A stretch of DNA of 64,000 nt from positions 6,944,001 through 7,008,000 of the forward strand of contig OZ059896.1 in the NCBI GenBank assembly GCA_964057225.1, in the 5' to 3' direction. Both the position numbers and the translations under genes were made by a program. Of this stretch, positions 927 to 46,700 are shown one piece after another; position 1 is the first letter of the stretch, and each line of letters starts with the position of its first letter. The notes under the pieces are model-generated. The model was not told the origin of the DNA. It saw only the letters and a program-made list of their open reading frames with translations, and did not search any database. This stretch comes from Auanema rhodensis (Eukaryota; Animalia; Nematoda).

Positions 927-3440
927 TTAAGCACGGCGACGGTAAGATTGCTCTGGCTCTGGGGCTGGGAGGATGTGCTTTCTAACGGTATCGTAGCTGA
1001 AATATGTTGATTAAGTAATGAAAGTTTGGAAGCATTGTATTACCTTGGGGAGCTTCCTCCGTTGTTATTGGTTTGTCCAACATTGATGTTGTTGGAGTTG
1101 GTGTTGTGGTTGATCATATCACCTCCCTTTTGGACGCTGGTTTGTCCTTGGTTGTTGGTTTGGGCGAGATCCTTGGCGTTGAAGATGTTTCCGGTAACAA
1201 CGTGTGGTGCAACGTAGCCTCCGTAGCTTCCGTAGTTTGGTTGGGATGGGTAAGATATATATGGTTGTGGGTAGCTTGGTTGAACGTATTGGGTATCGTA
1301 TTGTGGTCCCTTTCCGTTGTTGTTGGTTTGTCCGATGTTGATGGAGTTGGTGTTTTGTCCAACGTTGGTTTGGGCTCCTCCGACTTGGGTGTTGGATTGT
1401 CCTTGTTGGTTGGTCTGTCCAAGGTTTTGGGTGTTGATCTTGTTAGCGGCCAAGAGTTGTCCAATGTTGTGTGGGTATACTGGGATAGTATGGTAGGAAT
1501 CCAACAATTTGATGTTAACATTTGGGCTGAGGATAGATTGGCTGTTGGAGTTTCCGTTTCCAGTTTGCTTGGTTCCCAAAAGACCGCCGAGAAGGCCTCC
1601 GAGGAGTCCACCAGACTTTTCTGAAGAAACAGCGGTAGTCTGAACGGTTGGCTCATTGCGAGCTGGTTGTCCGTATCCTGGTTCTGGTTGTCCGTAGCTT
1701 GGCTGTCCGTAGCTTGGTTGTCCGTATTGGGAATCGTATTGTGGTCCCTTTCCGTTGTTGTTGGTTTGTCCGATGTTGATGGCATTGGAGTTCTCTCCAA
1801 CGTTGGTTTGGGCTCCTCCGACTTGGGTGCTGGATTGTCCTTGGTTGTTGTTTTGTCCTAATCCAGTGTAGTCAACCTTGTTTCCGGCGAAGATGTTTTG
1901 TGGAAGGTATTGTCCAACGTTTCCGTAGCTTGGTTGAGATGGGTAGCTTGGTTGAGCTGGGTAGGTGGTTGGGACGTAGGTTGGGGCGTACTTGGAGGCA
2001 TCGTATTGTGGGGCTCCGTATCCGGCTCCTTGTCCTCCGTTTTGGTTGGTTTGTCCGATGTTGATGGCGTTAGCGTTGGATCCAACGTTGGTTTGTTCTC
2101 CTCCGACTTGGGTGCTGGATTGTCCTTGGTTGTTGTTTTGTCCTAATCCAGTGTAGTCAACCTTGTTTCCGGCGAAGATGTTTTGTGGAAGGTATTGTCC
2201 AATGTTTCCGTAGCTTGGTTGAGCTGGGTAGGTGGTTGGGACGTAGGTTGGGGCGTACTTGGAGGCATCGTATTGTGGGGCTCCGTATCCGGCTCCTTGT
2301 CCTCCGTTTTGGTTGGTTTGTCCGATGTTGATGGCGTTAGCGTTGTTTCCTACATTGGTTTGGGCTCCTCCAACTTGGGTGTTTTCTTGTCCTTGGTTGT
2401 TAGTTTGTCCAAGATTTTTGGTGTTGATGAGGTTTCCGGCGAGAATGTTTTGTGGGATGTAGCTTCCGGCGTTTCCGTAGCTTGGTTGAGATGGGTAGAT
2501 TGGTTGGGATGGGTAAGCTGGATAGGTTTGTGGGTAGCTTGGTTGTCCGTATTGGGAATCGTATTGTGGTCCCTTTCCGTTGTTGTTGGTTTGTCCGATG
2601 TTGATGGAGTTTTGGTTAGATCCAACGTTGGTTTGGGCTCCTCCGACTTGGGTGTTGGATTGTCCTTGTTGGTTGTTCTGTCCAAGGTTTTGAGTGTTGA
2701 TGAGGTTTCCGGCGAGAATGTTTTGTGGGATGTAGCTTCCGGCGTTTCCGTAGCTTGGTTGAGATGGGTAGGTTGGTGGGGCATTGGTGTAAGCTGGTGG
2801 AGCAGTGGTGTAGACTGGGCGAGCAGTGGTGTAAGTTGGTGGGGCAGTGGTGTAAGCTGGTGGAGCAGTGGTGTAAGCTGGTGGGGCAGTGGTGTAAGCT
2901 GGTGGAGCAGTGTTGTAAGATGGTGGAGCTGTTCCGTAGGTGGCCTTGGAGTTTTTGCTTGGCTTGTCCTTCTTGTATTTCTCTTCAGATGAAGAGTTCT
3001 TGTATTTTTTCTTGGCATCATATTGTGGTCCCTTTCCGTTGTCATTGGTTTGTCCAATGTTGATGGCATTGGAGTTTTGTCCGACGTTAGTCTGTTCTCC
3101 TCCAACTTGGGTGTTGGTCTGTCCCTGGTTGTTAAGCTGGGAGAGGTTGGTAAGATCGAATTTGTTTCCAAGAACGGTGCCGGCGGATCCGATAGATGGG
3201 ATTGAGATCTTTGGCTGAAATAATATGTAATTAATTACGTAATATTATCATTGGGCTTACGAGGTTGAAAGCTGGGTCATGAACGGCCTTTCCGTTGTTG
3301 GTGTAATCCTTTGGTGAGACCTTTGGAGAATCAGCAGCTACCTTCATAACAGCTTCAGCATCGTTTCCACCGTAACCGGATGCATCGAGGTCGTAGCAGA
3401 AAGCTACAGCAACGACAGCTGAGATGAGGAACAACTTCAT
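927..3440 (-). CDS. Secreted Asn/Gln/Gly/Tyr-rich tandem-repeat protein, paralogue A (~806 aa)
   Basis: Exons 3440-3261, 3214-1044 and 996-927, with GT..TTTCAG introns of 46 and 47 bp. Signal peptide MKLFLISAVVAVAFC; 7 copies of NNQGQxxTQVGGAQTNVGxNxNAINIGQTN; TAPPAY repeats; ends SYRRRA*. Exon 2 is one open frame; the ORF track only shows its end (1040..1579) because no start codon occurs earlier in frame. Confidence 0.9.
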
Positions 3441-3519
3441 TACCTAAACATTTGGAAATAACACTAGAAAATGAGCCAAAATATTATTTGCGAATAAGCA
3501 CACATATATAAATGAATTT

Positions 3520-3552
3520 GTATATATATTTATATATATATATATATATATG
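3520..3552. repeat. (TA)n microsatellite
   Basis: Interrupted TA dinucleotide run upstream of paralogue A. Confidence 0.8.
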
Positions 3553-3647
3553 TATTCATTTATTATAAAATAAATATAATTATTATTTGTAATGAATAGA
3601 AGAATATTGAGATCGAATGCGATATGTCTTTTATCCATCGAACTCGC

Positions 3648-3656
3648 CTTATATAC
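3648..3656 (-). promoter_or_regulatory. TATA box (GTATATAAG) of repeat gene A
   Basis: GTATATAAG ~210 bp upstream of the ATG; same motif upstream of paralogue B in otherwise diverged flanks. Confidence 0.6.
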
Positions 3657-4787
3657 CTTGCCATATGAAGATTTTCAGTTTTTATGCATTTGTATGCAAG
3701 TCTTGCATTTAATAACCTTGACTAAATAAACTAAGTTTTGCTTGATAACCTAGTTGGGACAACCTTCCAAATTACAGTTTCCACTCTTGAACTTCGTTGG
3801 TGAACTGTTTATTTAACCCAATAGGCAATATCTTTTGATGGTGTACTGTAAATTTTCAGAAAAATACTGGTATAATTCGAAGTTATTAACTTCAGCTAAA
3901 ATGATTGACATCAAGTTCAGTTATTCGTGACGACTTTTGGAGGAAAATCAGAATATCAAGGTTATGAACCTGATTAGTAGAGTAGCTTTTACTACAAATC
4001 CATAAGCAATTTATCAAAATCGTTCAATCAAAAAAATCGCTTGTGATGCTTACAAGTTCCTCATTAGGTCAGAATCGTTAGATCAATTTACAATGTTTTG
4101 CAGAAATGTATAAATCAGATAATTATTATTTAAACGATTTCCCGGATTTAAATTTAGTGAAAAATTTTAATATTTTCATATTTGTTTATTTGGATCAAAT
4201 ATTCAATATTTATTGTTTTGTAATGTCTGACACACTCATATCTAAGCTGCATATGCTGTAAACTATAAAACTCGTGTAAATTATATAGTTATTTGCTGTT
4301 TCTGTACGATCTATGAAATTGCGATCGCTAAATCGTGAAACTGAAAGTTTGTTTTCATGAATTGGATACTTAATTAGTTATTGTTTTTGATCTTTATACA
4401 AAGTGCGAAAAACTGTTCTAAAACTGTTTTTCGAGTATTTCTTTTGAAGATTAGTTCGATAAAACTGTAAGATGTACCGCTATTCCCATTTCGCTTTTCT
4501 TAATTTGTCTATACTTATCTTTTGGAAATTTCTTTGAAAACAGTTTCAGTAATCATTGTACTTTCCATAATCATATACAATTGTCCTTTCATGTTTAGAG
4601 TAACTAATTCATTTTGGTTCTTTAATACTGTTCATACACTTTCTTTTGAAAATACTTGAATAAGCTTTTAATATTTAATAATTTCATTTTGCGAGAAGAC
4701 AATTAATACAATTACCACTTAATATTTATTAATTAATATTATTATAAACCCATTCAACCAATTTGTTTAAAACTTTGAGAAGTTAAT

Positions 4788-7426
4788 CTAAGCACGGCGA
4801 CGGTAAGATTGCTCTGGCTCTGGGGCTGGGAGGATGTGCTTTCTAACGGTATCGTAGCTGAAATATGTTGATTAAGTAATGAAAGTTTGGAAGCATTGTA
4901 TTACCTTGGGGAGCTTCCTCCGTTTTGGTTGGTTTGTCCGATGTTGATAGCGTTAGAGTTTTGTCCAACGTTGGTTTGGTCACCTCCCTTTTGGACGCTG
5001 TTTTGTCCTTGGTTGTTGGTTTGAGCGAGATCCTTGGTGTTGAAGAGGTTTCCGGCAACAACATTTTGTGGAAGGTAGCTTCCGGCATTTCCGTAGCTTG
5101 GGATGGTTGGGTAGATTGGTTGAGATGGGTAGATTTGGGTTTGTGGTTGTCCGTAACGAGAATCGTATTGTGGTCCCTTTCCGTTGTTGTTGGTTTGTCC
5201 GATGTTGATGGCATTGGAGTTCTCTCCAACGTTGGTTTGGGCTCCTCCGACTTGGGTGTTGGTCTGTCCTTGTTGGTTGTTTTGGTTCAAAAGTTGAGAG
5301 AAAAGAGCGTTGTCCTTGATAAGTGATCCGGCTCCTCCGGCTGGAGCGTATCCTCCGGCTGGAGCGTATCCTCCGACGGTTGGCTTCTTGATGAGGAGGT
5401 ATCCAAGGGGCTCATCGTAATGTGGGGCTCCGTATCCGGCTCCTTGTCCTCCGTTTTGGTTGGTTTGTCCGATGTTGATGGCGTTAGCGTTGGATCCAAC
5501 GTTGGTTTGTTCTCCTCCGACTTGGGTGTTGGATTGTCCTTGTTGGTTGTTTTGTCCAAGGTTTTGGGTGTGGATGAGGTTGTTCTTGATCAAATCAGCG
5601 GCTCCAGCTCCAGTTCCGTAAGTTGGGAGTTGTGGCATGTAGGTGGATGGGGATGGCATGTACTTGGAGGCATCGTATTGTGGGGCTCCGTATCCGGCTC
5701 CTTGTCCTCCGTTTTGGTTGGTTTGTCCGATGTTGATGGCGTTTTGGTTAGATCCAACGTTGGTTTGGGCTCCTCCGACTTGGGTGTTGGATTGTCCTTG
5801 TTGGTTGTTCTGTCCAAGGTTTTGGGTGTTGATGAGGTTTCCGGCGAGAATGTTTTGTGGGATGTAGCTTCCAGCGTTTCCGTAGCTTGGTTGAGATGGG
5901 TAGCTTGGTTGAGCTGGGTAGGTGGTTGGGACGTAGGTTGGGGCGTACTTGGAGGCATCGTATTGTGGTCCCTTTCCGTTGTTGTTGGTTTGTCCGATGT
6001 TGATGGCATTGGAGTTCTCTCCAACGTTGGTTTGGGCTCCTCCGACTTGGGTGCTGGATTGTCCTTGGTTGTTGTTTTGTCCTAATCCAGTGTAGTCAAC
6101 CTTGTTTCCGGCGAAGATGTTTTGTGGAAGGTATTGTCCAACGTTTCCGTAGCTTGGTTGAGATGGGTAGCTTGGTTGAGCTGGGTAGGTGGTTGGGACG
6201 TAGGTTGGGGCGTACTTGGAGGCATCGTATTGTGGGGCTCCGTATCCGGCTCCTTGTCCTCCGTTTTGGTTGGTTTGTCCGATGTTGATGGCGTTTTGGT
6301 TTTGTCCAACGTTGGTTTGGGCTCCTCCTACTTGAGTGTTTTCTTGTCCTTGGTTGTTAGTTTGTCCAAGATTTTTGGTGTTGATGAGGTTTCCGGCGAG
6401 AATGTTTTGTGGGATGTAGCTTCCGGCGTTTCCGTAGCTTGGTTGAGATGGGTAGCTTGGTTGAGCTGGGTAGGTGGTTGGGACGTAGGTTGGGGCGTAC
6501 TTGGAGGCATCGTATTGTGGGGCTCCGTATCCAGCTCCTTGTCCTCCGTTTTGGTTGGTTTGTCCGATGTTGATGGCGTTAGCGTTGGATCCAACGTTGG
6601 TTTGGGCTCCTCCGACTTGGGTGTTGGATTGTCCTTGGTTGTTGTTTTGTCCGAGGTTTTGGGTGTGGATGAGGTTGTTCTTGATCAAGTCAGCGGCTCC
6701 AGCTCCAGTTCCGTAAGTTGGGAGTTGTGGCATGTAGGTGGATGGGGATGGCATGTACTTGGAGGCATCGTATTGTGGTCCTCCGTATCCAGCTCCTTGT
6801 CCTCCGTTTTGGTTGGTTTGTCCGATGTTGATGGCGTTTTGGTTAGATCCAACGTTGGTTTGGGCTCCTCCAACTTGAACGTTTTCTTGTCCTTGGTTGG
6901 AAGTCTGTCCGAGGTTTTGGATGTTGAAGAGGTTGTTCTTGATCAAGTCAGCGGCTCCAGCTCCGGATCCGTAGGTTGGAATTTGTGGAACATAGGTGGA
7001 TGGGGATGGCATGTACTTGGAGGCATCGTATTGTGGTCCCTTTCCGTTTTGGTTGGTTTGTCCAATGTTGATGGCGTTAGCGTTGTTTCCTACATTGGTT
7101 TGAGCTCCTCCAACTTGGGTGTTGGTCTGTCCCTGGTTGTTAAGCTGGGAGAGGTTGGTGAGGTCCATCTTGTTTCCGGTGACGATGTTTGGAAGAGCAA
7201 TTTTTGGGAGCTGAAAATTGGAGTATGTTTTGAATGTTTTTAGCAGCAAGCTTACAGCGAAGTCACGGATTGGCTTTCCGTTGTTGGTGTAATCCTTTGG
7301 TGAAACCTTTGGTGAATGGGCAGCTACTTTCTTGACAGCTTCAGCATCGTTTCCACCGTAACCGGAGGCATCGAGGTCGTAGCAGAAAGCTACAGCGACG
7401 ACAGCGGAGATGAGGATCAACTTCAT
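4788..7426 (-). CDS. Secreted Asn/Gln/Gly/Tyr-rich tandem-repeat protein, paralogue B (~848 aa)
   Basis: ORF 4901..7426; exons 7426-7256, 7210-4905 and 4857-4788. Signal peptide; 9 copies of the N/Q/G core alternating with Y/P-rich spacers (PQYDASKY.., YPSQPSYG, AGGYAPAGGY); ends SYRRRA*. Confidence 0.92.
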
Positions 7427-7601
7427 TACCTAAACATTTGGAAATAAAATTAACATTTAAAAGAAAGAAAAAGAATAATTGAATGAACGAAATAAGTAAA
7501 AGTGTTGATATTATTTTATAAGCGAGCAACAATTTTTATTGGTTAAATAGATATTGTTGTTTGTTGTTTGGTTGGTATGCTCTATCTTGGTGAGCCTCTC
7601 G

Positions 7602-7610
7602 CTTATATAC
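7602..7610 (-). promoter_or_regulatory. TATA box (GTATATAAG) of repeat gene B
   Basis: GTATATAAGCGAG ~180 bp upstream of the ATG, matching the motif upstream of gene A. Confidence 0.6.
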
Positions 7611-8980: not shown

Positions 8981-9281
8981 GACAGGCTATAGATCAAGCT
9001 AGATTTTGCAAACGACGGGACTGCTGCCAGTAGTTGATCGAGTAATACTAGTGAAAAGCAACGTAATGGCTATTTTTCAGTTCGAGAGTTTGGGTGATTC
9101 AAGGTCGAATCATTCATCAATTATTAGTATATAGTAAAAACGATTTTACTACGGCATTTACTATTTTTTTTGTAAAGCTTGTGTGTACATATCGTCACCC
9201 CGGTCAAACTTGATCTGCAATGAAGCCGGTTTACTTTTGCAAAAAACCCTTATAGTTTTTAAAGATAAACTTATATTTCAG

Positions 9282-9901
9282 ATTCTTTGTCTGTTGGACT
9301 TCTATGTACACTACAGCTGTCAACGACAAGGAATTGGAAAGTCCGTTATTGAGTATATGCTCCAAAATGAGCATGCTGAGCCATATCAGGTATGTAGAAG
9401 ATCATATATATTAAAAACTAATACTTAAACAATGTAGCTCGCTCTGGATAATCCATCTGTTACTCTACTCGGCTTTATGTCACGAGGTTTTGGTTTGAGC
9501 AAGCCTGTATGGCAAAACACCAACTTTGTTGTGTTCGACGAACTTTTCAAATCTGTTTCTGTTACCGGAAAGGATGGATGTATGTTGACAAACACACACC
9601 ACAAGGTCGAAACTTATATTTAGGTGATGCTCCACCAGAGGGCTGGCGTCGACCACAAACACCACGACGTATTGGTAACGGTACTACTGACACTCGTTGG
9701 CTTAATCACGCTATCAGCGGGCATGCAGCCAAGGTCTGTTTTAATACTTGGCAGTTTTTTCTAAAGGAGTTTCTATTAAAGGGTCATGCTATGGCCGCTC
9801 CTGTTGATGCCGATCAAACTCCTGAAGGCGCTCTTGCGAACAGAGCTCACCAAGCAAAAGCAAGAAAGGCCCACATTCTTAGCAGCAAGCCCCTGTGGTA
9901 A
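9282..9901 (+). CDS. mec-17: Alpha-tubulin N-acetyltransferase MEC-17, 3' exons only (5' exons not in window)
   Basis: Spliced [79 protein letters not shown] matches my recollection of the C-terminal half of C. elegans MEC-17; starts at a phase-0 TTTCAG acceptor. Confidence 0.93.
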
Positions 9902-10371: not shown

Positions 10372-11551
<1,180 letters not shown>

Positions 11552-11947: not shown

Positions 11948-13784
11948 TCATAGCAGCTCTGAGATTCTTTCAGCGAGATACTTTAAGGAAAGAGCATCTT
12001 GAATGGATCCTTTTATTTTTAAGGAGCCATCCATATAAGCGTTAATAGGAGAAACAGTTTTTTTAATTAATTGGAAGAAAACTACTTCAGATGTTTCGAA
12101 GACAACATCGGGATTACTGGCTTGCCCGAGAGCGCAACTGCCAGGAGGGTGTTTGAGGTCTATGTACATTGGTTGTAAGCCACTACAATTGACTTGGAAA
12201 ACTTTTCCAATCGAGCGTGTCAGGGGTTCATCAATAGCAAGATTAATAACAGAAATAAGCTTGTCAACATCTAGACCAGGACTGAGATCAATCAGTACTC
12301 CCTCTGATGTACCAGGTTCCGGATTTGAACTCGATTCTTCTTCTTGTGGTTCACGATCCTTACTGAATTCTGTTAGGGCCGGTTCAATTACCTGAAAAAA
12401 AAATAAGTCTGAGCTGTATAATAATTTTTAATGAGTGACCTGCCAAATTTGTTTGCCTGTTTCTGAGGATGCTACAGCACTTAAAGCGGCTAAGCCCATA
12501 TTTTCTCCCTCTTTAATAATTTTAATCTCTGATAACTCAACGTTAGTTATTTCAACACCAAATTGAGCTGTGAAAGCTTGTAATTCATTCTGAATGTTGT
12601 TATCTTATACTATTTTTACAATTATAATCAATACCTGAAAATCGCCAGAAATAATCTTTCGATCTTGTGCATTTGTTAATTCACATATTCTTTTTTTACT
12701 AATGTATCTGTAGAGCATTGTATTCGCAAGCGTTCTTGTAGAACTATTTCTGTCCTGAAAAACAAATATTTATTTTATATTTTACACGTATGAAGTATCA
12801 ATACGTGTATCATGTTGGTAGAAGGTGGAACAGTACTTAGAATGAAAAACAAACTGATGGTTTTCGAAAATAAAGTAGGAAAAGTTTACCTGGACACCAC
12901 AAACAGCCGAGATGGGATCACGAATTTTCAAAAAAATTGTAGCACCAAGTTCTACTAGTCCTCTATCAATTGTGATAATCTGAAAGAATATTGTAACAAA
13001 GTGTATTATCCTGAAAAAATTACTTGTTGTGGTGGCACATTGAATGCTGTTATTGAAGTATTAATACGATGTGTACTATCGATACATGGAAAAACCAAAG
13101 CTACTCCTGGTCCTTTAGTTTTTTGTGCTCGACCAAGCCTTAATATGACCAATCGTTCTGATGCCGATATAAACTATAATATTATTTATTAAGTAAATAT
13201 GCTATTTTAATTATTTTTTTTACTTTTAGAACAAACATCAATGAAAAAGGTAATGTAATTGCTGCTAATATTACACTCATTCCATAAATAAATAGTTCAA
13301 CAGCATTCATTGGAGGAATCTAAAATTTAAAATAAGTTTTATTGTGATAATGAGACAAAAATTCAAATAGCTTTATATCGAAGATAGTTTTGATATTTAT
13401 AACGTTATAGATAAAGATATATTTTTGAATAATATTTTTCACAAACAATAACTATATCGAAAAACATAATTATTATAAATTCATACCTCTTCTTCATCTC
13501 TATTGAACATATGAGAATAAGTAAAACGACTATACTTATTTCCTTGTCGTCCATATCTAAAATTATAAAATTATGATATAAAAATAAATTTAAAAAATAA
13601 CAAAGTTATACCTTTTGGGCACCTCATATCCCATACGATCTAAATCATTATAAGTGGCATAGGTGAAGGCGCTACCGAACGTTCCATCAGGAACTCCATA
13701 TTCAATTTCGTTATTATATTTTGCCATTCTGTCTTCTTCATCGTCATTCGGCAAAGCCGAATAATGAACAGATGATAGAGGCAT
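11948..13784 (-). CDS. unc-24: Stomatin-like protein with C-terminal SCP2 domain (UNC-24/STOML1)
   Basis: Band-7 domain (RLGRAQKTKGPG..AFNVPPQQIITIDRGLVELGA..DPISAVCGVQDRN) plus SCP2 tail (SPINAYMDGSLKIKGSIQDA); N-terminal EYGVPDG..YNDLDRMGY as in UNC-24. Confidence 0.92.
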
Positions 13785-15652: not shown

Positions 15653-16451
15653 TTAGTGGTGACGATGTCTAAGTCCACGTCCACCACGCATACCGTGATG
15701 TCCGAAATGTCCGAAGCGTTCTTTGTGGAGTTCGAACAATTCATCACGTGCATCCTCAGAGAGAGCAGTGTAGATATCACGCTTTTGTTGGTCGAGTTTC
15801 TCGAGTTTATCATAGGCATCACGAGCTTCCTTGCTCAATTTCTCAACCTTAGCTTTGTAAGCTTCACGATCATCTTCCATTTTCTTGTGGAATTTGTTGA
15901 ATTCTTCAAGAAGATCTCCAGTGAGGATTTTGTCAGCAAGTTCTCTAAGCTTAGCTGGCTTTTCATCGTGCTTGATGCTTCTGTCCTTAAAATTGAATAT
16001 ATGATAGATGATCAATTAGTATACTGTATCAATACCTTGAAGATAGCACGGAACTGTTCTTGGATATCCTTGGAGGCATTCTTAAGGAATGGTGGAAGTG
16101 GTGGGCCTCTCTTGAAGATAGATTTACGTTGTTCCTTAGTGAGTCCTTCCATCTAATAGATCAAATAAGAATTTTCAAACAAATCACATTATTCTAACCA
16201 ATTCACGGGTCTGTCCTTGTTGATTGTAACATTTGTCTCCCTCTTTGTAATCGGCCCAAATTTCCTTCATTTTGGTTTGCATTTCTTCTGGGAGATCTTC
16301 AATAAATGGTGGAAGCCCGCATGGTGGAGGTCCCTAAGAATAAGCAACATTTTTAAAAATCACACACTATTAGGTTTACCTTTCTGAATCCTCCAAATGC
16401 CTGAGTTACCGATACCAGCAACGCAGCAGCCAAAATAAAACGAAGAGACAT
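15653..16451 (-). CDS. Secreted helical SXP/RAL-2 (DUF148)-like protein
   Basis: Four exons; signal peptide MSLRFILAAALLVSVTQA; CGLPPF and PPFLKNASKDIQEQFRAIFKD..EKPAKLRELA motifs; His/Gly/Arg-rich tail; TATA (CTATATAAG) at ~16515-16523. Confidence 0.75.
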
Positions 16452-26688: not shown

Positions 26689-29600
26689 TTAAGAGAGGAA
26701 TGTTGGTGAAAGGACATTAGCAGCTAAGGCTGAATCAGTGAAAACAGATGGTGATAAGACTGATGGTGAAAGAATAGTACCTGAGAGAATAGTTGGTGAT
26801 AGTACATCTGGACATAATACAAATGGAGATAATATTAAAGGGGATAAAACATAAGGATTAATAACATTAGGAGCTAAAACATAAGGAGAAAAGACGTAAA
26901 CATTGAATACTGCAGCTGATAAGACGTTGGGTCCTAATACGTATGGGGAAAAGATAAGTGGATTACCGACCTGTTAAAAAATAAAAATAAATTATATCAT
27001 ATAATTAATAAAATTTTATTTTATTTTTTAATAAATTTGAACTTAAAACTATACCTGCGGAGATATAACTGGTGGAGAGATTAAAAGAGGGGATAAGATA
27101 TTAGGTGAGAAAATTGATGGTGACAAGGTAACAGGACCAAGAACAGATAACTGAAATAGAAGTATCATTAACTCAATTATTATCTGATTGAACTAAAACT
27201 TTTTAGTCTTAAAACTTTATAATATAAGTTATAAATTAAATATTTTAATATTTACCGTATTAACAGTTGGGGAAAAGGCATATGGAGATAATGTCACATG
27301 TTGGAAGTATACAGTAGCACGTTTAGAACGATTTGGTGACAACATATTATGAGGATCTCCCATTTTTCCATCAGCTATTAATCGAATTGTATTTCGAAGG
27401 CTTTCTTCTTTTTCAAATTCAGACATTTCTCCATAACGTTCCATATCAAATGGAAATTCATTTGATCTATTTAATAAAGCTGAAAAATAATTAGATAAAA
27501 GCTTAATATAGTTTTTATAATAATTACCATTTTCTCCATATAATTGTTGCATTTGTTCTTTTTCCAAAAATGAATATTTTCTATCTTCTAAATGTTTTTT
27601 CTGATGAGGATGAAGGGCATTCTCTAATTCTTTAAATGTTGTTTCTAATAAATTAGTTATATCTACAACATCTTTATCTAAATTAAGAGATTTTAATCCT
27701 TTTACAGATTTCATGGCTTCATCAACAGCATTATTAACACCTGTAAATATATAATTATTAATGAAAATATTTGATTATTTCCAATAAAAACCTGATAAAT
27801 CCATTACAAGTTCCATAATTGTATCACGATCTTTTTCATTCATTCCAGTACTTTCAAGAATAGTAGGTATTGGTAATATACTATTTTCACTATCATCCTT
27901 ATATAATGGGAAAAGATTTGGTGATAATAATTTTCTTAAATTATAAATAAATAAATAATTTTAAAAATAAAATATAAATACTCACTTGCTTGTTGAATAT
28001 TTGTCTGGCATAATTGGTAAAAAGCGAGGTGATAACATATTATAGTTTATATCTTTTGTATGTTTTGATACAGTATCTACAAGACCATAAAGCTTTTCAT
28101 CAGCCATACTTGGAACATCCGGCATAATATCACGGAATCTAAGATAAATATATCATATTAAAATATTTTTTTAAATATTAATTATATAAATACCTATCAG
28201 TAAATGTTTTTCGTGATCTTAATGGATTATTTTTTCCTACAACCATATCAAGCATACGATGTTTGAATTGACCATCATTATTCTTTTTTTCTACCATATC
28301 TTGAAGCTAAAAAAAATTAAATTATAAATTGGTTTTTTAATTATTATATTTATTTACCTCACGAATTTTTTTATAAGATTCTTTTAGTTTTAAAGTTTCT
28401 TGTACAGTTTCATTTCGAAGTGTTCCAACAACTGTAGAAATTAGATTTGTTACAGTCTAGAAAGAAAGAAATTAAGAATATTTTGTTTTCATTCAAAACA
28501 AAACATCAAAGTTCTTTTATTTTTTATTTATTTTTCTAGTTGCTTAGCTTCCGCATATTATTTGAATGTGTGAACATATTAATATTTTTAAAAAAATTAA
28601 TAATTTTAATTAAATAATATTTTTAAAATTAATTAATATAATTCAAAAATTTATTATACTCTGTTAATTACCTTGACTGGTGATTTATTATTTGATAATA
28701 AACTAGGCATGTGATCCATCTTAGTAACTCTGAATCCATGAGTTGTGTCACCTCGATCTAGTCTCTTGGCTTCCGCTACCATTTCCTCCTAAAATGATAA
28801 TATAATATAATAATAATTATATTATTTTAATAATATTACATTTGCATATAAGGATAGTATATTACGCTTAAATCTACGATGTCTAAACTTGTTAAAATCA
28901 ATTCGTATTGGAGTGCGTAAATTTGATTCATGTTGTTCACTGAAAAAAGGTAATGTTTAATGATTAATCTAAAATTGAAATAATAAATTTGAGAAGATAC
29001 GGTAGTGACATCTTCATTGACATGAAAATCATGTGACGTTCAATATCCATAGAAAGTGCACGATTTTTTAAAATCGAAATTTAGTTCATGATTAACAAAA
29101 AAAAGCGACATTTTGACGATATTTAGTGATAATACATATGTTAATTGGATTATTTTTAATTAATTAATAAACATAAATCAAGCATATTATCATTATTTAT
29201 ATAATAACAAATGTTTTAAATTAATAGTCATATCATATGAAGAACTGGAAGTTTGATTTATCAATAAAGTTTCGAACGGATAATTCTAGTCTTATCCTTC
29301 AAGCTAAATAAATTATTTATAGATATCTTGTCTCTTTCTTTGTTTCTGATGATCGGATTCGAAGCAGGAGTGATTGCTACGGATATATGAAAAGCACAAG
29401 TTCATTTCAAATGAATGAACTATCATGTTATTTCAAAAAGTGAACGTCATCGGCTGATGTTTCACTTGGCCGATTGACCCACTTCATCATTAGAAAGTAG
29501 ATATGTAGTCAATCTTCCTTTTTTTTTGTCATATCACGTAGAGCATTTCCATTGTTTCTCAATACTTTACATCCTGTAATTTCTTACAGGTTCGATATTA

Positions 29601-43700: not shown

Positions 43701-46700
43701 AAAAAAAAATTATAAACTAAACTTGTCTGTTCTTTTTGAATAACTCACCGTGTTGCATAGGCACTTTTTCGGAATCAACTTTCTCATTTACGTTAATTGA
43801 ATCAAGTTGGAACAATTCTGTGTTTAATTTTCTTGGAAAACCATTATATTTAAAAGTTCGTTCTTCTCCAGTGGAGGGGTCGATAAAAGGTTCGGGAGGA
43901 GCAATAAATACCTGAGGAAGAAAAAACAGATGAAGAAAGAAAAAAAAACTAACATTTGGATGCTTTTCCGAAGAAGACGTATCAGTTTCCAACAATGGTA
44001 AGGGAGGAGTATCATCTAAAAATGAGATTATAATAAAAATATAAATATATAAAAAAAACAAACCATTAATTTTATTAATGCAGTCGTCAAAAAAAGCATT
44101 GAACGTATTTTTATCAGATACAAAGCTACGCTCCTCGATAAAACGAATAAAAGACTGAGTTTCACAAAATCTAAAAAAACGTATATCACTATTTGTAAGA
44201 GGAAAAAGTTGATACTTTCTGAAAAACGGTTCACTAGTCTTATCCCGAGATTTCATAAATCCTTCTATATCAAACAAATTTCCTGTATCCGTGGCATTTA
44301 CAGTTGCTGAAGCACTTTTAATAGGACGTAAGTATGACTGATAGCCCTTCATGATATTTGCCATAAATCTGTTAAATATAAAATAATTATAACGATAAAA
44401 AGAGTTTGAATATACCTAAGGAAAGCATCTTGTATTTCAGTTTCTATTTCTTTCCGTTTCCTATGCATTTGTTGTTCTTCATCTAGAGGTAAAAAATCAT
44501 TTCGCTTATGACGGGTAAGAAACTCATAAGATTGAGCACAAATTCTAAAAAAAAATTTTTTTTAATACAAAATTCATATCCCAGTTGTTTTACCTTTTGT
44601 ATAACTCTTCTAATGAGTATTTCAACTGTTTTGTTGCTTTCTTAGGAAGCATAGAGAGTTTGATGGACTGTCTAACCTTTGACCCACTAATAGTACATGT
44701 ATCTAAGTCAAAACATGTGACATCGTCTGGAGGATCTTCATACAGTTCGAAATATCTGAATATTATTGTAAAAGAATATAAATAGTCTAAAATATATAAA
44801 AAAAACCTTGAATCTACACCCGCGATAAAAGGTAAAGGGGCATGAAGTACTCCTGCTAAGCCTAATGGACATTGAGGAACATACGGACATTGCCAATGAA
44901 ACGGAAACATTAGAGCCCGGATTGATTCGGCAACAGCAGTAAGCATCCATGATCTACAATTAAAAAAAAACAAATAATGAAATAAAATTCATGTGAAAAA
45001 ACCTCAAGGAATGAACAAGAATTTTTTGCTCCAATAATGCCAAAAGCATTAGATACATCAAATTTTCAGATCCTAAACTTCTTAGAGTTTCAAATAATTG
45101 TGCACCTGTGAAATAAAAGTAAAAACAGCAAATTGAAAAAATAAAACCATTTAAGGGCAACTGGCAATCATCTTGAGATTCAAAGCTAATAGTTTCGTTG
45201 CCTAATTCAACAACAACTTGAGGCCTTCGAGGAGTTGGAAAAGATACTTCATATCTCTGCAAATAACATTAATCACATTAAACAAAAAAAAACATACCAA
45301 GTGTGATAGATATCGTTCAATAGGAACTGATGTTTCAGTTACTTTTTGACTTATCCTGTGAATATAATAAAGAAAGCGCTTAAATGAATGGAAAAAGGGA
45401 TAACGAGAAATTAAGCAAATCGCTATGTTGGTATGGAATTCGATCTGGAAGCAAAAAACTAGATTAACTTTCTTGTTTAGTATGTACTTGGTCAGCAGGA
45501 TCATTATTACTTGAAGAATCATCTGCAACAACTCCACTAATACCATCTCCTGGAGTTAATTCCAGTTGTTCTAACTGTTCGTCCGTCAATTTATCAGTAT
45601 ATTTCTCATAAAACGATACAGCTGCACCATAGAATTTAGTTCCATTCTATGAAAAAAAGATTTAATAAGAAAGCTAAAACAAAATCAACTTCATCAGTTA
45701 ACACGAATGTAGTAAAAGATCTATCTGGAGCTTGGCAATTAGATGGCCAACATTCAATGACAGCTCCCATTGGCAAACAAAATAAGGGCACATTTTGAGC
45801 AAGACGAAACTGATCGTCATTCGAGACACGTAAAGGAAAAGAATCTAGCACCTGGACAACATGTATTATTAAATGTATTAATTAAGCTTAACAAACAGTG
45901 GGTTTATAAGCAAGTCGTTTAGATGTTCCCTGTGTTTTCTTATAACATATATAAACATCAGAACCAACCATACCCTGAATAAAAAAAACAATTGTTCGAG
46001 GCTTCAATAAAACTTCAAACCTTATTCAGATTTTTTGAAATTTTATAATAAGTATGCGGTGGAACTTCTCCTTTATTTGCTAATATTACAACAATGTTAG
46101 TTACCACAAATTGACTAGGTGTGCTATTTTGAGGTGCGCGACGATAAGTGAGAAATATTCCCTGTAATTTTTATTCCAAAGATATCAAAGTAATTAAGCA
46201 AACCGGAGTCGCGTTATTTACATTAGCTGTTTTTCCAAAAGGTGTCGTTTGAACAACATTGATGTCTACCATTGGTTTATCACCACGTCCTACATCTTGT
46301 AATAAGCCAACTAATAAGCTAATTTCAAACCTTGATCAAGAATCCCAATATCTACTATAGGTGGTTTATGATAGCCTCGTCGGAACCCAAGAAAAACACT
46401 TGGCATTCTTATCGAACCATGATTCAAATCAGCAGGATGTCCTAATGGAGTGGTAGAGATCATTTCGAAGCCATTGGGCATCTATATTAATAAGTATGAA
46501 AATTGTGCTCAACAATGATGAGTAACCGTTTCACCCTGCGAAGGAAAAATAACACATATATCTGTTATAGGAGCCAGAGGTTGAGTATTTCTGCATCCAC
46601 ATTCTTGTGATGATGGAGATAATTGCTCAAGTGACGATTTATCTAATCCAGCAATCACGAAATGTTCAAAAATTTGATGCTCATCATCACGCATTGTCAT
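40740..46700 (-). CDS. denn-4: DENND4-like Rab GEF (MABP-uDENN-DENN-dDENN-PPR)
   Basis: [84 protein letters not shown]-like [38 protein letters not shown]. Confidence 0.93.

What the first reader, a model, noticed from the sequence alone, without database searches (positions are those of the whole stretch)
927..7426. Tandem pair of secreted N/Q/G repeat proteins with functional-amyloid / beta-solenoid architecture
Seen: two signal-peptide proteins with no Cys after the signal. Each is built from a ~35-aa core (NLGQ-NNQQGQ-SNTQVGG-AQTNVGS-NQNAINIGQ-TNQNGG; 7 copies in A, 9 in B) alternating with Tyr/Pro spacers (PQYDASKY, YPSQPSYG, TAPPAY, AGGY), with a shared basic tail SYRRRA. Established: short polar-x-hydrophobic-Gly strands with N/Q ladders form beta-arcade amyloids (curli CsgA, FapC, HET-s), and Tyr/GGY spacers are dityrosine cross-linked in nematode cuticle. 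These proteins differ from the Cys-containing ABU/PQN family and lack epicuticlin YGDE motifs. Inference: an undescribed secreted cross-beta fibre or coating (cuticle/sheath, eggshell, glue, or desiccation/ice protection).
Basis: partly seen in the sequence, partly recalled or inferred. Interest (0 to 1): 0.8.

Follow-up and report, generated by a model that had tools for sequence, protein, structure and literature searches.

The report
Secreted Asn/Gln repeat proteins, nematode
Two neighbouring, transcribed roundworm genes encode secreted proteins in which rigidly conserved asparagine/glutamine/glycine blocks alternate with tyrosine/proline linkers. They belong to an unnamed family otherwise found only in hookworms, Nippostrongylus and Auanema, and are most likely a bulk structural material, but where they go and what they build is untested.

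Summary
Genes A (927-3440) and B (4788-7426) lie on the minus strand. Each has three exons, 45-47 nt GT..AG introns, a signal peptide holding the only Cys, 7 (A) or 9 (B) copies of a 47-residue N/Q/G core, Tyr/Pro spacers, and a separate last exon ending SYRRRA.

RNA-like contigs cover the exons, skip the intergenic DNA, and carry spliced junctions. A third paralogue lies just upstream of the window. The scan had already noted this family on the adjacent DNA of the same genome (s1-409944, s1-410067).

The family is conserved, not an orphan. Relatives are tandem clusters of "hypothetical proteins" in Necator, four Ancylostoma species and Nippostrongylus (38-48% identity), and Auanema sp. JU1783 (57%). 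An exhaustive profile search of 1.84 billion representatives found only 13. There is no Pfam match, no PDB relative and no paper.

Seventeen core positions are invariant across 49 modules, and codon bias is extreme. This indicates an ordered unit made in bulk.

AlphaFold confidence is low (pLDDT 41.6). Even so, the model stacks the cores, and all 50 listed structural matches I recognise as parallel beta-helices (Z up to 10.1). A single core does not fold alone. Curli membership was tested and rejected.

The beta-solenoid reading is plausible but unproven. Fibre formation, tissue and function are untested.

The parts
927..3440 (-). Gene A, ATG to stop: three exons, 7 core modules
   Evidence: Frame reading and splice sites. 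RNA-like contigs cover 3100-3469 but not 3470-4653.
3261..3440 (-). Gene A exon 1: signal peptide MKLFLISAVVAVAFC (holds the only Cys) plus a conserved N-terminal segment (SGYGGND..SPK..DYT)
   Evidence: The N-terminal segment is conserved in the strongylid relatives.
3215..3260 (-). Gene A intron 1 (46 nt, GTAAGC..TTTCAG)
   Evidence: A low-depth joint 3212>3261 in RNA-like run X3.
1044..3214 (-). Gene A exon 2: 7 N/Q/G cores and Tyr/Pro spacers. One spacer is Lys-rich. A 99-residue spacer contains GGLLGGLLGGLLG.
2774..2929 (-). Array of about 7 copies of a 21-nt repeat encoding the heptad TAPPAYT, inside the 106-residue spacer after the first core of gene A
   Evidence: Tandem Repeats Finder: period 21, 7.4 copies; translation.
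997..1043 (-). Gene A last intron (47 nt), identical to that of gene B
927..996 (-). Gene A last exon, encoding ..YDTVRKHILPAPEPEQSYRRRA and the stop
4788..7426 (-). Gene B, ATG to stop: three exons, 9 core modules
   Evidence: RNA-like contigs cover 4654-5300.
7256..7426 (-). Gene B exon 1: signal peptide and conserved N-terminal segment
7211..7255 (-). Gene B intron 1 (45 nt, in frame, so the raw ORF reads through it)
   Evidence: The loose-end sequence at 3288 in X3 and X4 equals the spliced exon 1-exon 2 junction of gene B.
4905..7210 (-). Gene B exon 2: 9 cores of 47 residues (N 25%, Q 17%, G 17%, no Pro, almost no Tyr) alternating with spacers of 33-48 residues (Tyr 14%, Pro 16%)
4858..4904 (-). 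Gene B last intron (47 nt)
   Evidence: Joint 4857>4905 skipping 47 nt in RNA-like runs X3, X4 and X5, absent from DNA run X1.
4788..4857 (-). Gene B last exon, encoding ..PEPEQSYRRRA and the stop
3441..3461 (-). 21 nt before the ATG of gene A, ending TTTAG. Identical copy before gene B at 7427-7447. Likely a 3' splice or trans-splice acceptor (inferred).
3643..3656 (-). GTATATAAGGCGAG, a TATA-like element upstream of gene A. Gene B has GTATATAAGCGAG at 7598-7610.
   Evidence: a function as promoter is inferred only.

Best explanation
A and B are two of at least three tandem paralogues of an unnamed, conserved nematode family of abundant secreted structural proteins.

Each protein has:
- a signal peptide and a conserved N-terminal segment of about 40 residues;
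- 7 or 9 copies of a 47-residue Asn/Gln/Gly core with fixed positions (N-x-hydrophobic-x-x-Q-x-L-G-Q-x-N-x-Q-G-Q-x-N-x-Q-x-G-G-x-Q-T-N-V-G-x-N-x-N-A-I-N-I-G-Q-T-N-x-N-G);
- spacers of 33-106 residues, rich in Tyr and Pro, and almost always containing the motif P-x-Y-D at or within ten residues of their start;
- a short tail ending Y-R-R-R-A.

Shown here: the gene structure, transcription and splicing, conservation, strict partition of composition between cores and spacers, and very strong codon optimisation.

Inferred: each core forms about four short beta-strands, with turns at the invariant Gly positions. Cores stack on one another, within a chain and possibly between chains, into a parallel beta-helix or cross-beta rod lined by Asn/Gln ladders. 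The Tyr/Pro spacers loop out and provide sites for oxidative Tyr cross-linking. The result would be an insoluble extracellular material. Which matrix it belongs to (cuticle, sheath, eggshell or another) is unknown.
For: - Gene models and splicing.
- Transcription: RNA-like contigs cover exons only, while a DNA run covers all 30 bins.
- Bulk expression is suggested by codon use in a genome whose intergenic DNA is 28% G+C: AAC 93%, CAA 93%, GGA 96%, CCA 99%, TAC 96%. That these are the preferred codons of highly expressed rhabditid genes is my own knowledge.
- Conservation is position-specific, not merely compositional. 13 columns are invariant relative to the first sequence, and 17 columns are invariant across 49 modules from this worm, Ancylostoma, Necator and Nippostrongylus. 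Core dN/dS among the 23 local modules is about 0.35.
- Cores have 0% Pro and 0-1% Tyr. Spacers have 16% Pro and 13-14% Tyr.
- The residues flanking the invariant GG are coupled: K-GG-D versus V/I/Q-GG-A, 61/1/9/69. This fits a tight turn, although module lineage could also explain it.
- The AlphaFold full-length model puts about 4 strands in each of the six better-modelled cores and none in the spacers.
- The structural matches of that model that I recognise are all parallel beta-helices: SufD/SufB (Z 10.1-9.1), PfbA, autotransporters, tailspikes and pectate-lyase-like enzymes. About 200 residues align, spread over model residues 85-768, which means cores from along the chain are stacked.
- A single core alone gets no fold, as expected if stability needs stacking.
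Against: - AlphaFold confidence is low: mean pLDDT 41.6 and no residue at 90 or above. From my own knowledge, AlphaFold tends to draw beta-solenoids for repetitive sequences.
- Foldseek found nothing.
- There are no data on protein location, solubility, fibres or cross-links.
- The RNA status of runs X3-X5 is the tool's guess, and contig depth cannot rank expression.
- Family identifiers were not found in the held supplements of three hookworm secretome papers. This is weak, because identifiers differ between annotations and the files are partial.
- The K/D coupling may only reflect two old module subtypes.
Confidence: 0.5

Rival explanations
1. Disordered, phase-separating matrix or glue protein. 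The cores never adopt a fixed fold, and the protein acts through multivalent weak Asn/Gln and Tyr contacts, like the low-complexity proteins of the C. elegans pharyngeal cuticle.
For: AlphaFold pLDDT is low overall, and a single core has no predicted structure. There were no usable language-model neighbours. Nematode pharyngeal cuticle is reported to be rich in secreted low-complexity, phase-separating, amyloid-like proteins (PMC9629831).
Against: Seventeen positions are invariant over 49 modules from distant genera, with no length variation inside the core. Disordered regions usually conserve composition, not position. Pro is excluded from the cores entirely.
Confidence: 0.2
2. Soluble beta-helix binding protein or adhesin. 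The stacked cores would form a flat Asn/Gln/Thr-lined surface that binds a polysaccharide, a surface, ice or, in the parasites, a host molecule.
For: Many of the structural neighbours of the model are beta-helix adhesins and polysaccharide-binding or polysaccharide-cleaving proteins: PfbA, UpaB, HMW1, EtpA, Awp3b and tailspikes.
Against: The matches show a shared arrangement only, at 4-14% identity. The cores have no aromatic residues, which such binding sites commonly use (my knowledge). The family also occurs in a free-living worm, so a host-directed role cannot be ancestral.
Confidence: 0.12
3. Polyprotein precursor, cut at or near the recurring P-x-Y-D motif into units of about 90 residues or into peptides.
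For: P-x-Y-D-A follows nearly every core. In the 49-module alignment P is present in 37, Y in 42, D in 41 and A in 35. It occurs 6 times in A and 8 times in B.
Against: There are no dibasic or other known convertase sites between modules; the only basic cluster is the last four residues. Spacer lengths and sequences vary widely. RNA-like contigs say nothing about processing.
Confidence: 0.06
4. Annotation artefact: repetitive DNA with open frames but no real genes.
For: Long antisense ORFs also run through the repeats, for example 6122-7243 on the plus strand.
Against: Canonical introns are spliced out in RNA-like contigs. Signal peptide, N-terminal segment and tail are conserved across genera. 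dN/dS is below 1 and codon bias is strong on the minus-strand frame only.
Confidence: 0.01

Closest known systems
Uncharacterised tandem gene clusters of Strongylida and Auanema: A. ceylanicum Y032_0132g1713-1721, N. americanus NECAME_09018/09020 and RB195_002928-002932, A. duodenale Aduo_010691-010694, A. caninum ANCCAN_05905/05906, N. brasiliensis Q1695_007655-007676, Auanema sp. JU1783 CAI4220765.1
   Same: Same architecture throughout: signal peptide, N-terminal SGYG.N..V..A.KSP..KP.DYT segment, the same core with the same invariant N/Q/G positions, P-x-Y-D-A after each core, Tyr/Pro spacers, and a C-terminus ending Y plus basic residues. All are arranged as same-strand tandem clusters.
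   Different: Identity is 38-48% to the strongylids and 57% to Auanema. The strongylids mostly use the K-GG-D form of the core and often end with a distinct NVSQTNNQSVN module. Here the V-GG-A form dominates, and K-GG-D occurs only in the last module. All relatives are annotated only as hypothetical, or with automatic names such as 'fibroin heavy chain-like' and 'hyphally regulated cell wall protein'.
Bacterial functional amyloids: curli CsgA (Pfam Curlin_rpt) and FapC
   Same: Secreted proteins with imperfect tandem units rich in conserved Gln/Asn/Gly, and short hydrophobic-Gly strands predicted to stack as a beta-solenoid. This is what it may work like.
   Different: No sequence kinship. There was no Curlin_rpt hit at E up to 1. 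hhalign of the module profile against E. coli CsgA gave probability 0.1%. There are no bacterial relatives in 1.84 billion representatives. Here the cores are separated by long Tyr/Pro spacers, which curli lacks.
C. elegans pharyngeal-cuticle low-complexity proteins (ABU/PQN paralogue group and related disordered families; PMC4232772, PMC9629831)
   Same: Secreted, Q/N-rich, repeat-built nematode matrix proteins proposed to be amyloid-like.
   Different: Exon 2 of both genes here has no Cys. No Caenorhabditis protein was found by word search, profile word search or exhaustive HMM.
Parallel beta-helix proteins (SufD/SufB, PfbA, autotransporter passengers, phage tailspikes, Candida Awp3b)
   Same: They are the best structural neighbours of the AlphaFold model, at Z 10.1-6 over about 170-210 residues.
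   Different: Identity is only 4-14%. The model is low-confidence. The known proteins are continuous helices without looped-out spacers of 30-100 residues between every pair of turns.
Tyr/Pro/Lys repeat cross-linking proteins (mussel foot protein 1 decapeptides, plant extensins). Recalled from memory, not tested.
   Same: The spacer arrays TAPPAYT x7 here and YKP(A/S)PP(A/S)YKP in hookworm members resemble those Tyr-Pro repeats, which are cross-linked through Tyr or DOPA.
   Different: This is compositional resemblance only. No homology was tested, and the modification chemistry in these worms is unknown.

Membership tests
Unnamed strongylid/Auanema N/Q-core family | 47-residue core with the invariant pattern N..L.Q...QGQ...Q.GG.Q.N.G.N.N..N..Q.N | tested here: met
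   Alignment A1 of 49 modules. All 16 window modules score E 1e-19 to 3e-24 against the profile.
Unnamed strongylid/Auanema N/Q-core family | Signal peptide plus conserved N-terminal segment (SGYG.N...V...A..SP...P.DYT) | tested here: met
   Exon 1 of A and B compared with P0003, P0006-P0008 and others.
Unnamed strongylid/Auanema N/Q-core family | P-x-Y-D-A motif after each core, and a C-terminus ending Y plus basic residues | tested here: met
   Auanema P0026 ends ..PEPEPEQAYRRRA.
Unnamed strongylid/Auanema N/Q-core family | Same-strand tandem gene cluster | tested here: met
   Three genes here. Six called same-strand genes in 23 kb of the A. ceylanicum locus, where only P0003 was confirmed as family by sequence, the 661- and 460-aa neighbours fit P0009 and P0019 by length, and the rest were not checked. 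Consecutive locus tags in the other species.
Curli / Curlin repeat (PF07012) | Match to the Curlin_rpt profile or to CsgA | tested here: not met
   No hit at E up to 1 or 0.1. hhalign against E. coli K-12 CsgA gave probability 0.1% with 5 aligned columns.
Functional amyloid (as a mode of action, not a family) | Cross-beta fibres, dye binding, detergent insolubility | not testable with these tools
   Only a low-confidence stacked-beta model is available.
ABU/PQN paralogue group of C. elegans | Cys-containing repeats and Caenorhabditis homologues | tested here: not met
   No Cys in exon 2. No Caenorhabditis hit.
   YGDE is absent from A and B.
Parallel beta-helix fold | Confident model or solved structure with stacked coils | tested here: inconclusive
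   pLDDT 41.6 and pTM 0.46. VIA-align Z 10.1 to SufD, and the listed rows that I recognise are beta-helices. Foldseek found no match.

The most novel reading that the evidence does not exclude
This is an animal-encoded functional beta-solenoid or amyloid. It would have arisen independently of bacterial curli and be made in bulk by a subset of clade V nematodes, including the human hookworms. Asn/Gln-ladder cores would polymerise by stacking, and looped-out Tyr/Pro spacers would then be covalently cross-linked, giving a new class of nematode extracellular fibre.
Probability: 0.2. Interest if true: 0.8.

Novelty: new variant of a known kind. Interest (0 to 1): 0.55.

Why it matters
If the cores do stack into a beta-helix or cross-beta fibre, this would be a rare case of a dedicated animal structural amyloid with a clean modular design. 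It would have arisen independently of curli. It would also add an unrecognised bulk component to nematode extracellular matrices.

The family is absent from the Caenorhabditis proteomes searched. It is present as expanded tandem clusters in human and animal hookworms and in the laboratory model Nippostrongylus, so it could be a parasite-relevant structural antigen or marker that C. elegans work cannot reveal. A free-living Auanema-type worm that carries it offers a tractable system for testing function.

Even if it proves to be an ordinary matrix protein, the family deserves a name and a profile. Current annotations are "hypothetical" or misleading automatic names.

Tried and rejected
- **Pfam.** Scans of both proteins and of 17 family members gave only sub-threshold noise: EsV_1_7_cys and Glycine zipper for the two window proteins, and ivWA-helical_N in 2 of 17 (best E 3.7e-10, gathering score not checked; I read it as low-complexity noise).
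- **PDB by sequence.** A profile search at E up to 10 found nothing.
- **ESM Atlas.** No usable hit by features.
- **Foldseek against PDB.** Nothing; one row at E 8.8.
- **AlphaFold on a single module with 49 sequences.** No fold, pLDDT 50.
- **Curli kinship.** Rejected.
- **Bacterial origin.** Rejected: all named hits of the exhaustive search are nematode, and two unnamed Logan contigs resemble hookworm members.
- **Literature.** Six locus tags gave no paper. 'Hyphally regulated cell wall' plus Nippostrongylus gave none. Supplements of five hookworm papers were either not held or had no identifier match. The Nippostrongylus EST paper I recalled could not be fetched. The Ancylostoma EST paper gave no usable lead.
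- **Promoter comparison for tissue clues.** Only a TATA-like element and the 21 nt before the ATG are shared. No informative GATA, PHA-4 or E-box pattern appeared.
- **Organism name.** Run and organism names are coded. I ran no further search on it.
- **Exon joining.** Exons were never joined. Every search, alignment and fold used exon 2, or parts of it, by reference.

Full report
**What is in the sequence**

The region 927-7426 holds two genes on the minus strand. Their G+C content is about 50%, against 28% for the flanking DNA. Reading the three minus-strand frames and the DNA at the junctions gives the same three-exon structure for both.

- Gene A: exon 1 3261-3440, intron 3215-3260, exon 2 1044-3214, intron 997-1043, last exon 927-996.
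- Gene B: exon 1 7256-7426, intron 7211-7255, exon 2 4905-7210, intron 4858-4904, last exon 4788-4857.
- All four introns are 45-47 nt with GTAAG/GTAAT...TTTCAG ends.
- Intron 1 of B is in frame. The mechanical 841-aa ORF therefore reads through it and then stops inside the last intron, so that ORF is not the true product.
- The last intron and last exon of A and B are identical base for base up to the stop codon.

**Transcription**

One sequencing-run search found 15 holders in four studies, with coded names. I laid three small runs that the tool guesses to be RNA (X3-X5) and one DNA run (X1) on 3100-5300.

- The DNA run covers all 30 bins.
- The three small runs cover only 3100-3469 (the 5' end of A) and 4654-5300 (the 3' end of B), with nothing across the intergenic 3470-4653.
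- They carry a joint 4857>4905 that skips 47 nt with GT..AG on the minus strand. The DNA run lacks it.
- A low-depth joint removes intron 1 of A.
- A loose end at 3288 in X3 and X4 reads exactly as the spliced exon 1-exon 2 junction of B (compare).

Both genes are therefore transcribed and spliced as modelled. The caveat is that "RNA" is the tool's guess, and contig depth cannot rank expression.

**Protein anatomy**

- Exon 1 encodes MKL(F/I)LISAVVAVAFC..., a typical signal peptide holding the only Cys. Exon 2 of both genes has none.
- Exon 2 carries 7 (A) or 9 (B) cores. A whole-genome scan with the module profile confirms these counts.
- Cores and spacers are sharply different in composition. 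Cores are N 25%, Q 15-17% and G 17%, with 0% Pro and 0-1% Tyr. Spacers are Tyr 13-14% and Pro 16%.
- Spacers are 33-48 residues in B and 38-106 in A. Nearly all contain (G/A)PQYD at or within ten residues of their start.
- A has extra spacer features: a Lys-rich stretch, seven TAPPAYT heptads (a 21-nt repeat at 2774-2929), and a GGLLGGLLGGLLG stretch.
- The last exon adds ..YDTVRKHILPAPEPEQSYRRRA.
YGDE is absent.

**Family**

- A word-indexed search with exon 2 of B found 18 proteins. All come from Necator americanus, Ancylostoma ceylanicum, A. duodenale, A. caninum and Nippostrongylus brasiliensis, at 34-45% identity. All are "hypothetical" or carry automatic names.
- Repeating the search with a 17-sequence alignment gave 28 proteins from the same species only.
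- I built a 67-position profile of one module from 49 modules. I ran it, without any word index, against 1.84 billion cluster representatives. There were 13 hits at E up to 0.001, and 11 at 1e-10 or better.
- The new hits are further hookworm and Nippostrongylus proteins, three partial proteins of Auanema sp. JU1783, and two unnamed contigs from public runs.
- The Auanema protein P0029 is the closest relative, at 57% identity. Auanema P0026 ends ...PEPEPEQAYRRRA.
- Earlier agents of this scan call this genome Auanema-type. That fits these results, but I did not test it independently.
- In every species the genes carry consecutive locus tags. In A. ceylanicum six same-strand genes were called within 23 kb around P0003.
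- No Caenorhabditis, Haemonchus or non-nematode protein appeared. The representative library hides members that are more than 50% identical to a listed one, so absence from other strongylids is not proven.

**The cluster in this genome**

The profile finds 26 modules in the 181-Mb assembly.

- 9 are in B and 7 in A.
- 7 are in a third paralogue, C, just upstream of the window (window coordinates about -1560 to -3500). C has the same last-intron and last-exon design, and its tail ends EQSYRRRL.
- 2 divergent modules lie between C and A.
- 1 lone divergent module lies 6.2 Mb away, beside a collagen gene.

**Is the core ordered or merely low-complexity?**

Four observations argue for an ordered unit.

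1. Conservation is positional. 17 columns are invariant in all 49 modules from distant genera, several more are at least 90% conserved, and the core has no length variation.
2. Pro is completely excluded from the cores but makes up 16% of the spacers.
3. The two residues flanking the invariant GG are coupled: K-GG-D versus V/I/Q-GG-A, with counts of 61/1/9/69 over 140 non-identical modules. This is what a tight turn with a cross-turn contact would give. Two old module lineages could also produce it, so it is only suggestive.
4. Among the 23 local cores, dN/dS is about 0.35, even though dS is depressed by codon selection.

Codon use is extreme for an AT-rich genome: AAC 93%, CAA 93%, GGA 96%, CCA 99%, TAC 96%, ATC 85% and AAG 81%. 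From my own knowledge of rhabditid codon bias, this marks very highly expressed genes. It fits a bulk structural product better than a signalling one.

**Structure prediction**

- AlphaFold on exon 2 of B with 17 sequences gave mean pLDDT 41.6 and pTM 0.46.
- Strands fall only in the cores, about four per core in the six better-modelled ones. pLDDT there is 50-70. The spacers are unstructured.
- One core alone, with 49 sequences, gave no structure (pLDDT 50).
- Foldseek found nothing.
- An exhaustive structural alignment against 48,161 PDB representatives gave 91 chains at Z 5 or more. Those of the 50 listed that I recognise are parallel beta-helices: SufD (Z 10.1), SufB-type proteins (9.8 and 9.1), the adhesin PfbA (8.7), IgA1 protease, VacA, autotransporters, tailspikes and pectate-lyase-like enzymes.
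- Each match aligns about 170-210 residues spread over model residues 85-768. The model therefore stacks the cores of one chain into a single helix and loops the spacers out.
- The tool's own note puts the typical best Z for unmatched models at 7-8, so 10.1 is only moderately above background. AlphaFold is also prone to draw solenoids for repeats (my knowledge).
- I take this as consistent with the beta-solenoid reading, not as proof of it.

**Comparison with known systems**

- Curli is the nearest functional analogue, but it is not a relative. There is no Curlin_rpt match. hhalign of the module profile against E. coli K-12 CsgA, fetched, gave probability 0.1%.
- The ABU/PQN proteins and other low-complexity proteins of the C. 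elegans pharyngeal cuticle show that nematodes do build matrices from secreted Q/N-rich, possibly amyloid-like proteins (PMC4232772, PMC9629831).
- The Tyr/Pro spacers, and the YKPAPPAYKP arrays of hookworm members, recall Tyr-cross-linked adhesive or wall proteins. That is from memory and was not tested.

**Conclusion**

- This is a real, expressed, conserved and undescribed family with a block-copolymer design.
- The cores behave like an ordered unit that probably needs stacking.
- Fibre or amyloid formation, cross-linking, tissue and biological role remain inferences.
- I put 0.5 on a stacked-beta structural matrix protein. I put 0.2 on a disordered matrix or glue protein, 0.12 on a soluble binding beta-helix, and 0.06 on a processed polyprotein.

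- Exons were never joined. All searches used exon 2 or parts of it by reference.

Noticed in passing
G000:C4:6940600-6943300 (window coordinates about -3400 to -700; locus L013): A third paralogue, C, has 7 cores, the same last-intron and last-exon design, and a tail ending EQSYRRRL. Upstream of it lie two divergent modules of the NVSQ/EVSQVNNN type, which resemble the C-terminal module of the hookworm proteins. I could not find its 5' end or signal peptide.
   Followed up: partly
L018:1434-1595 (-) with upstream ORFs 1637-1846 (-) and 2613-2765 (-); G000:C4 about 13.18 Mb: A lone divergent module ends ...SGYRK, like the hookworm C-termini. Upstream on the same strand are a Thr-rich, mucin-like ORF and a signal-peptide-like ORF. 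The whole lies next to a cuticle collagen gene (448-1122 +). It may be a separate small member of the family.
   Followed up: partly
window 1073-7243, plus strand: Long open frames on the antisense strand of both genes (for example 6122-7243, 373 aa, and 2183-2992, 269 aa) are shadows of the stop-poor repeats, not genes.
   Followed up: yes
window 927-1060 and 4788-4921: The last 16 nt of exon 2, the last intron and the last exon of A and B are 100% identical up to the stop codon and diverge right after it. The upstream flanks share only 21 nt and a TATA-like element. This suggests recent gene conversion of the 3' end.
   Followed up: partly
window 27232-27714 (-): An exon-like ORF has a weak match to Pfam Moulting_cycle (MLT-10-like): E 2.7e-4, 20.8 bits, just under the cut-off of 22. 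This would be a moulting-matrix gene about 20 kb from the cluster.
   Followed up: no
window 43720-44364 (-): An exon with a dDENN domain (E 5e-8), probably part of a MADD/AEX-3-like gene.
   Followed up: no
window 9183-9428 (+), 10918-11190 (-), 11948-12169 (-), 15653-16015 (-): By eye, these are exons of housekeeping-type neighbours: a GNAT-like QRQGIG motif, an ARF/ARL-like GTPase, an SCP2-like domain, and a coiled SXP/RAL-2-like protein with a His-rich end. None was tested with a profile.
   Followed up: no
P0006, P0008, P0017 (hookworm relatives): Some hookworm members end in 8-10 copies of YKP(A/S)PP(A/S). This parallels the TAPPAYT array of gene A, so Tyr-Pro heptad or octad arrays recur in the family at different places.
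   Followed up: no
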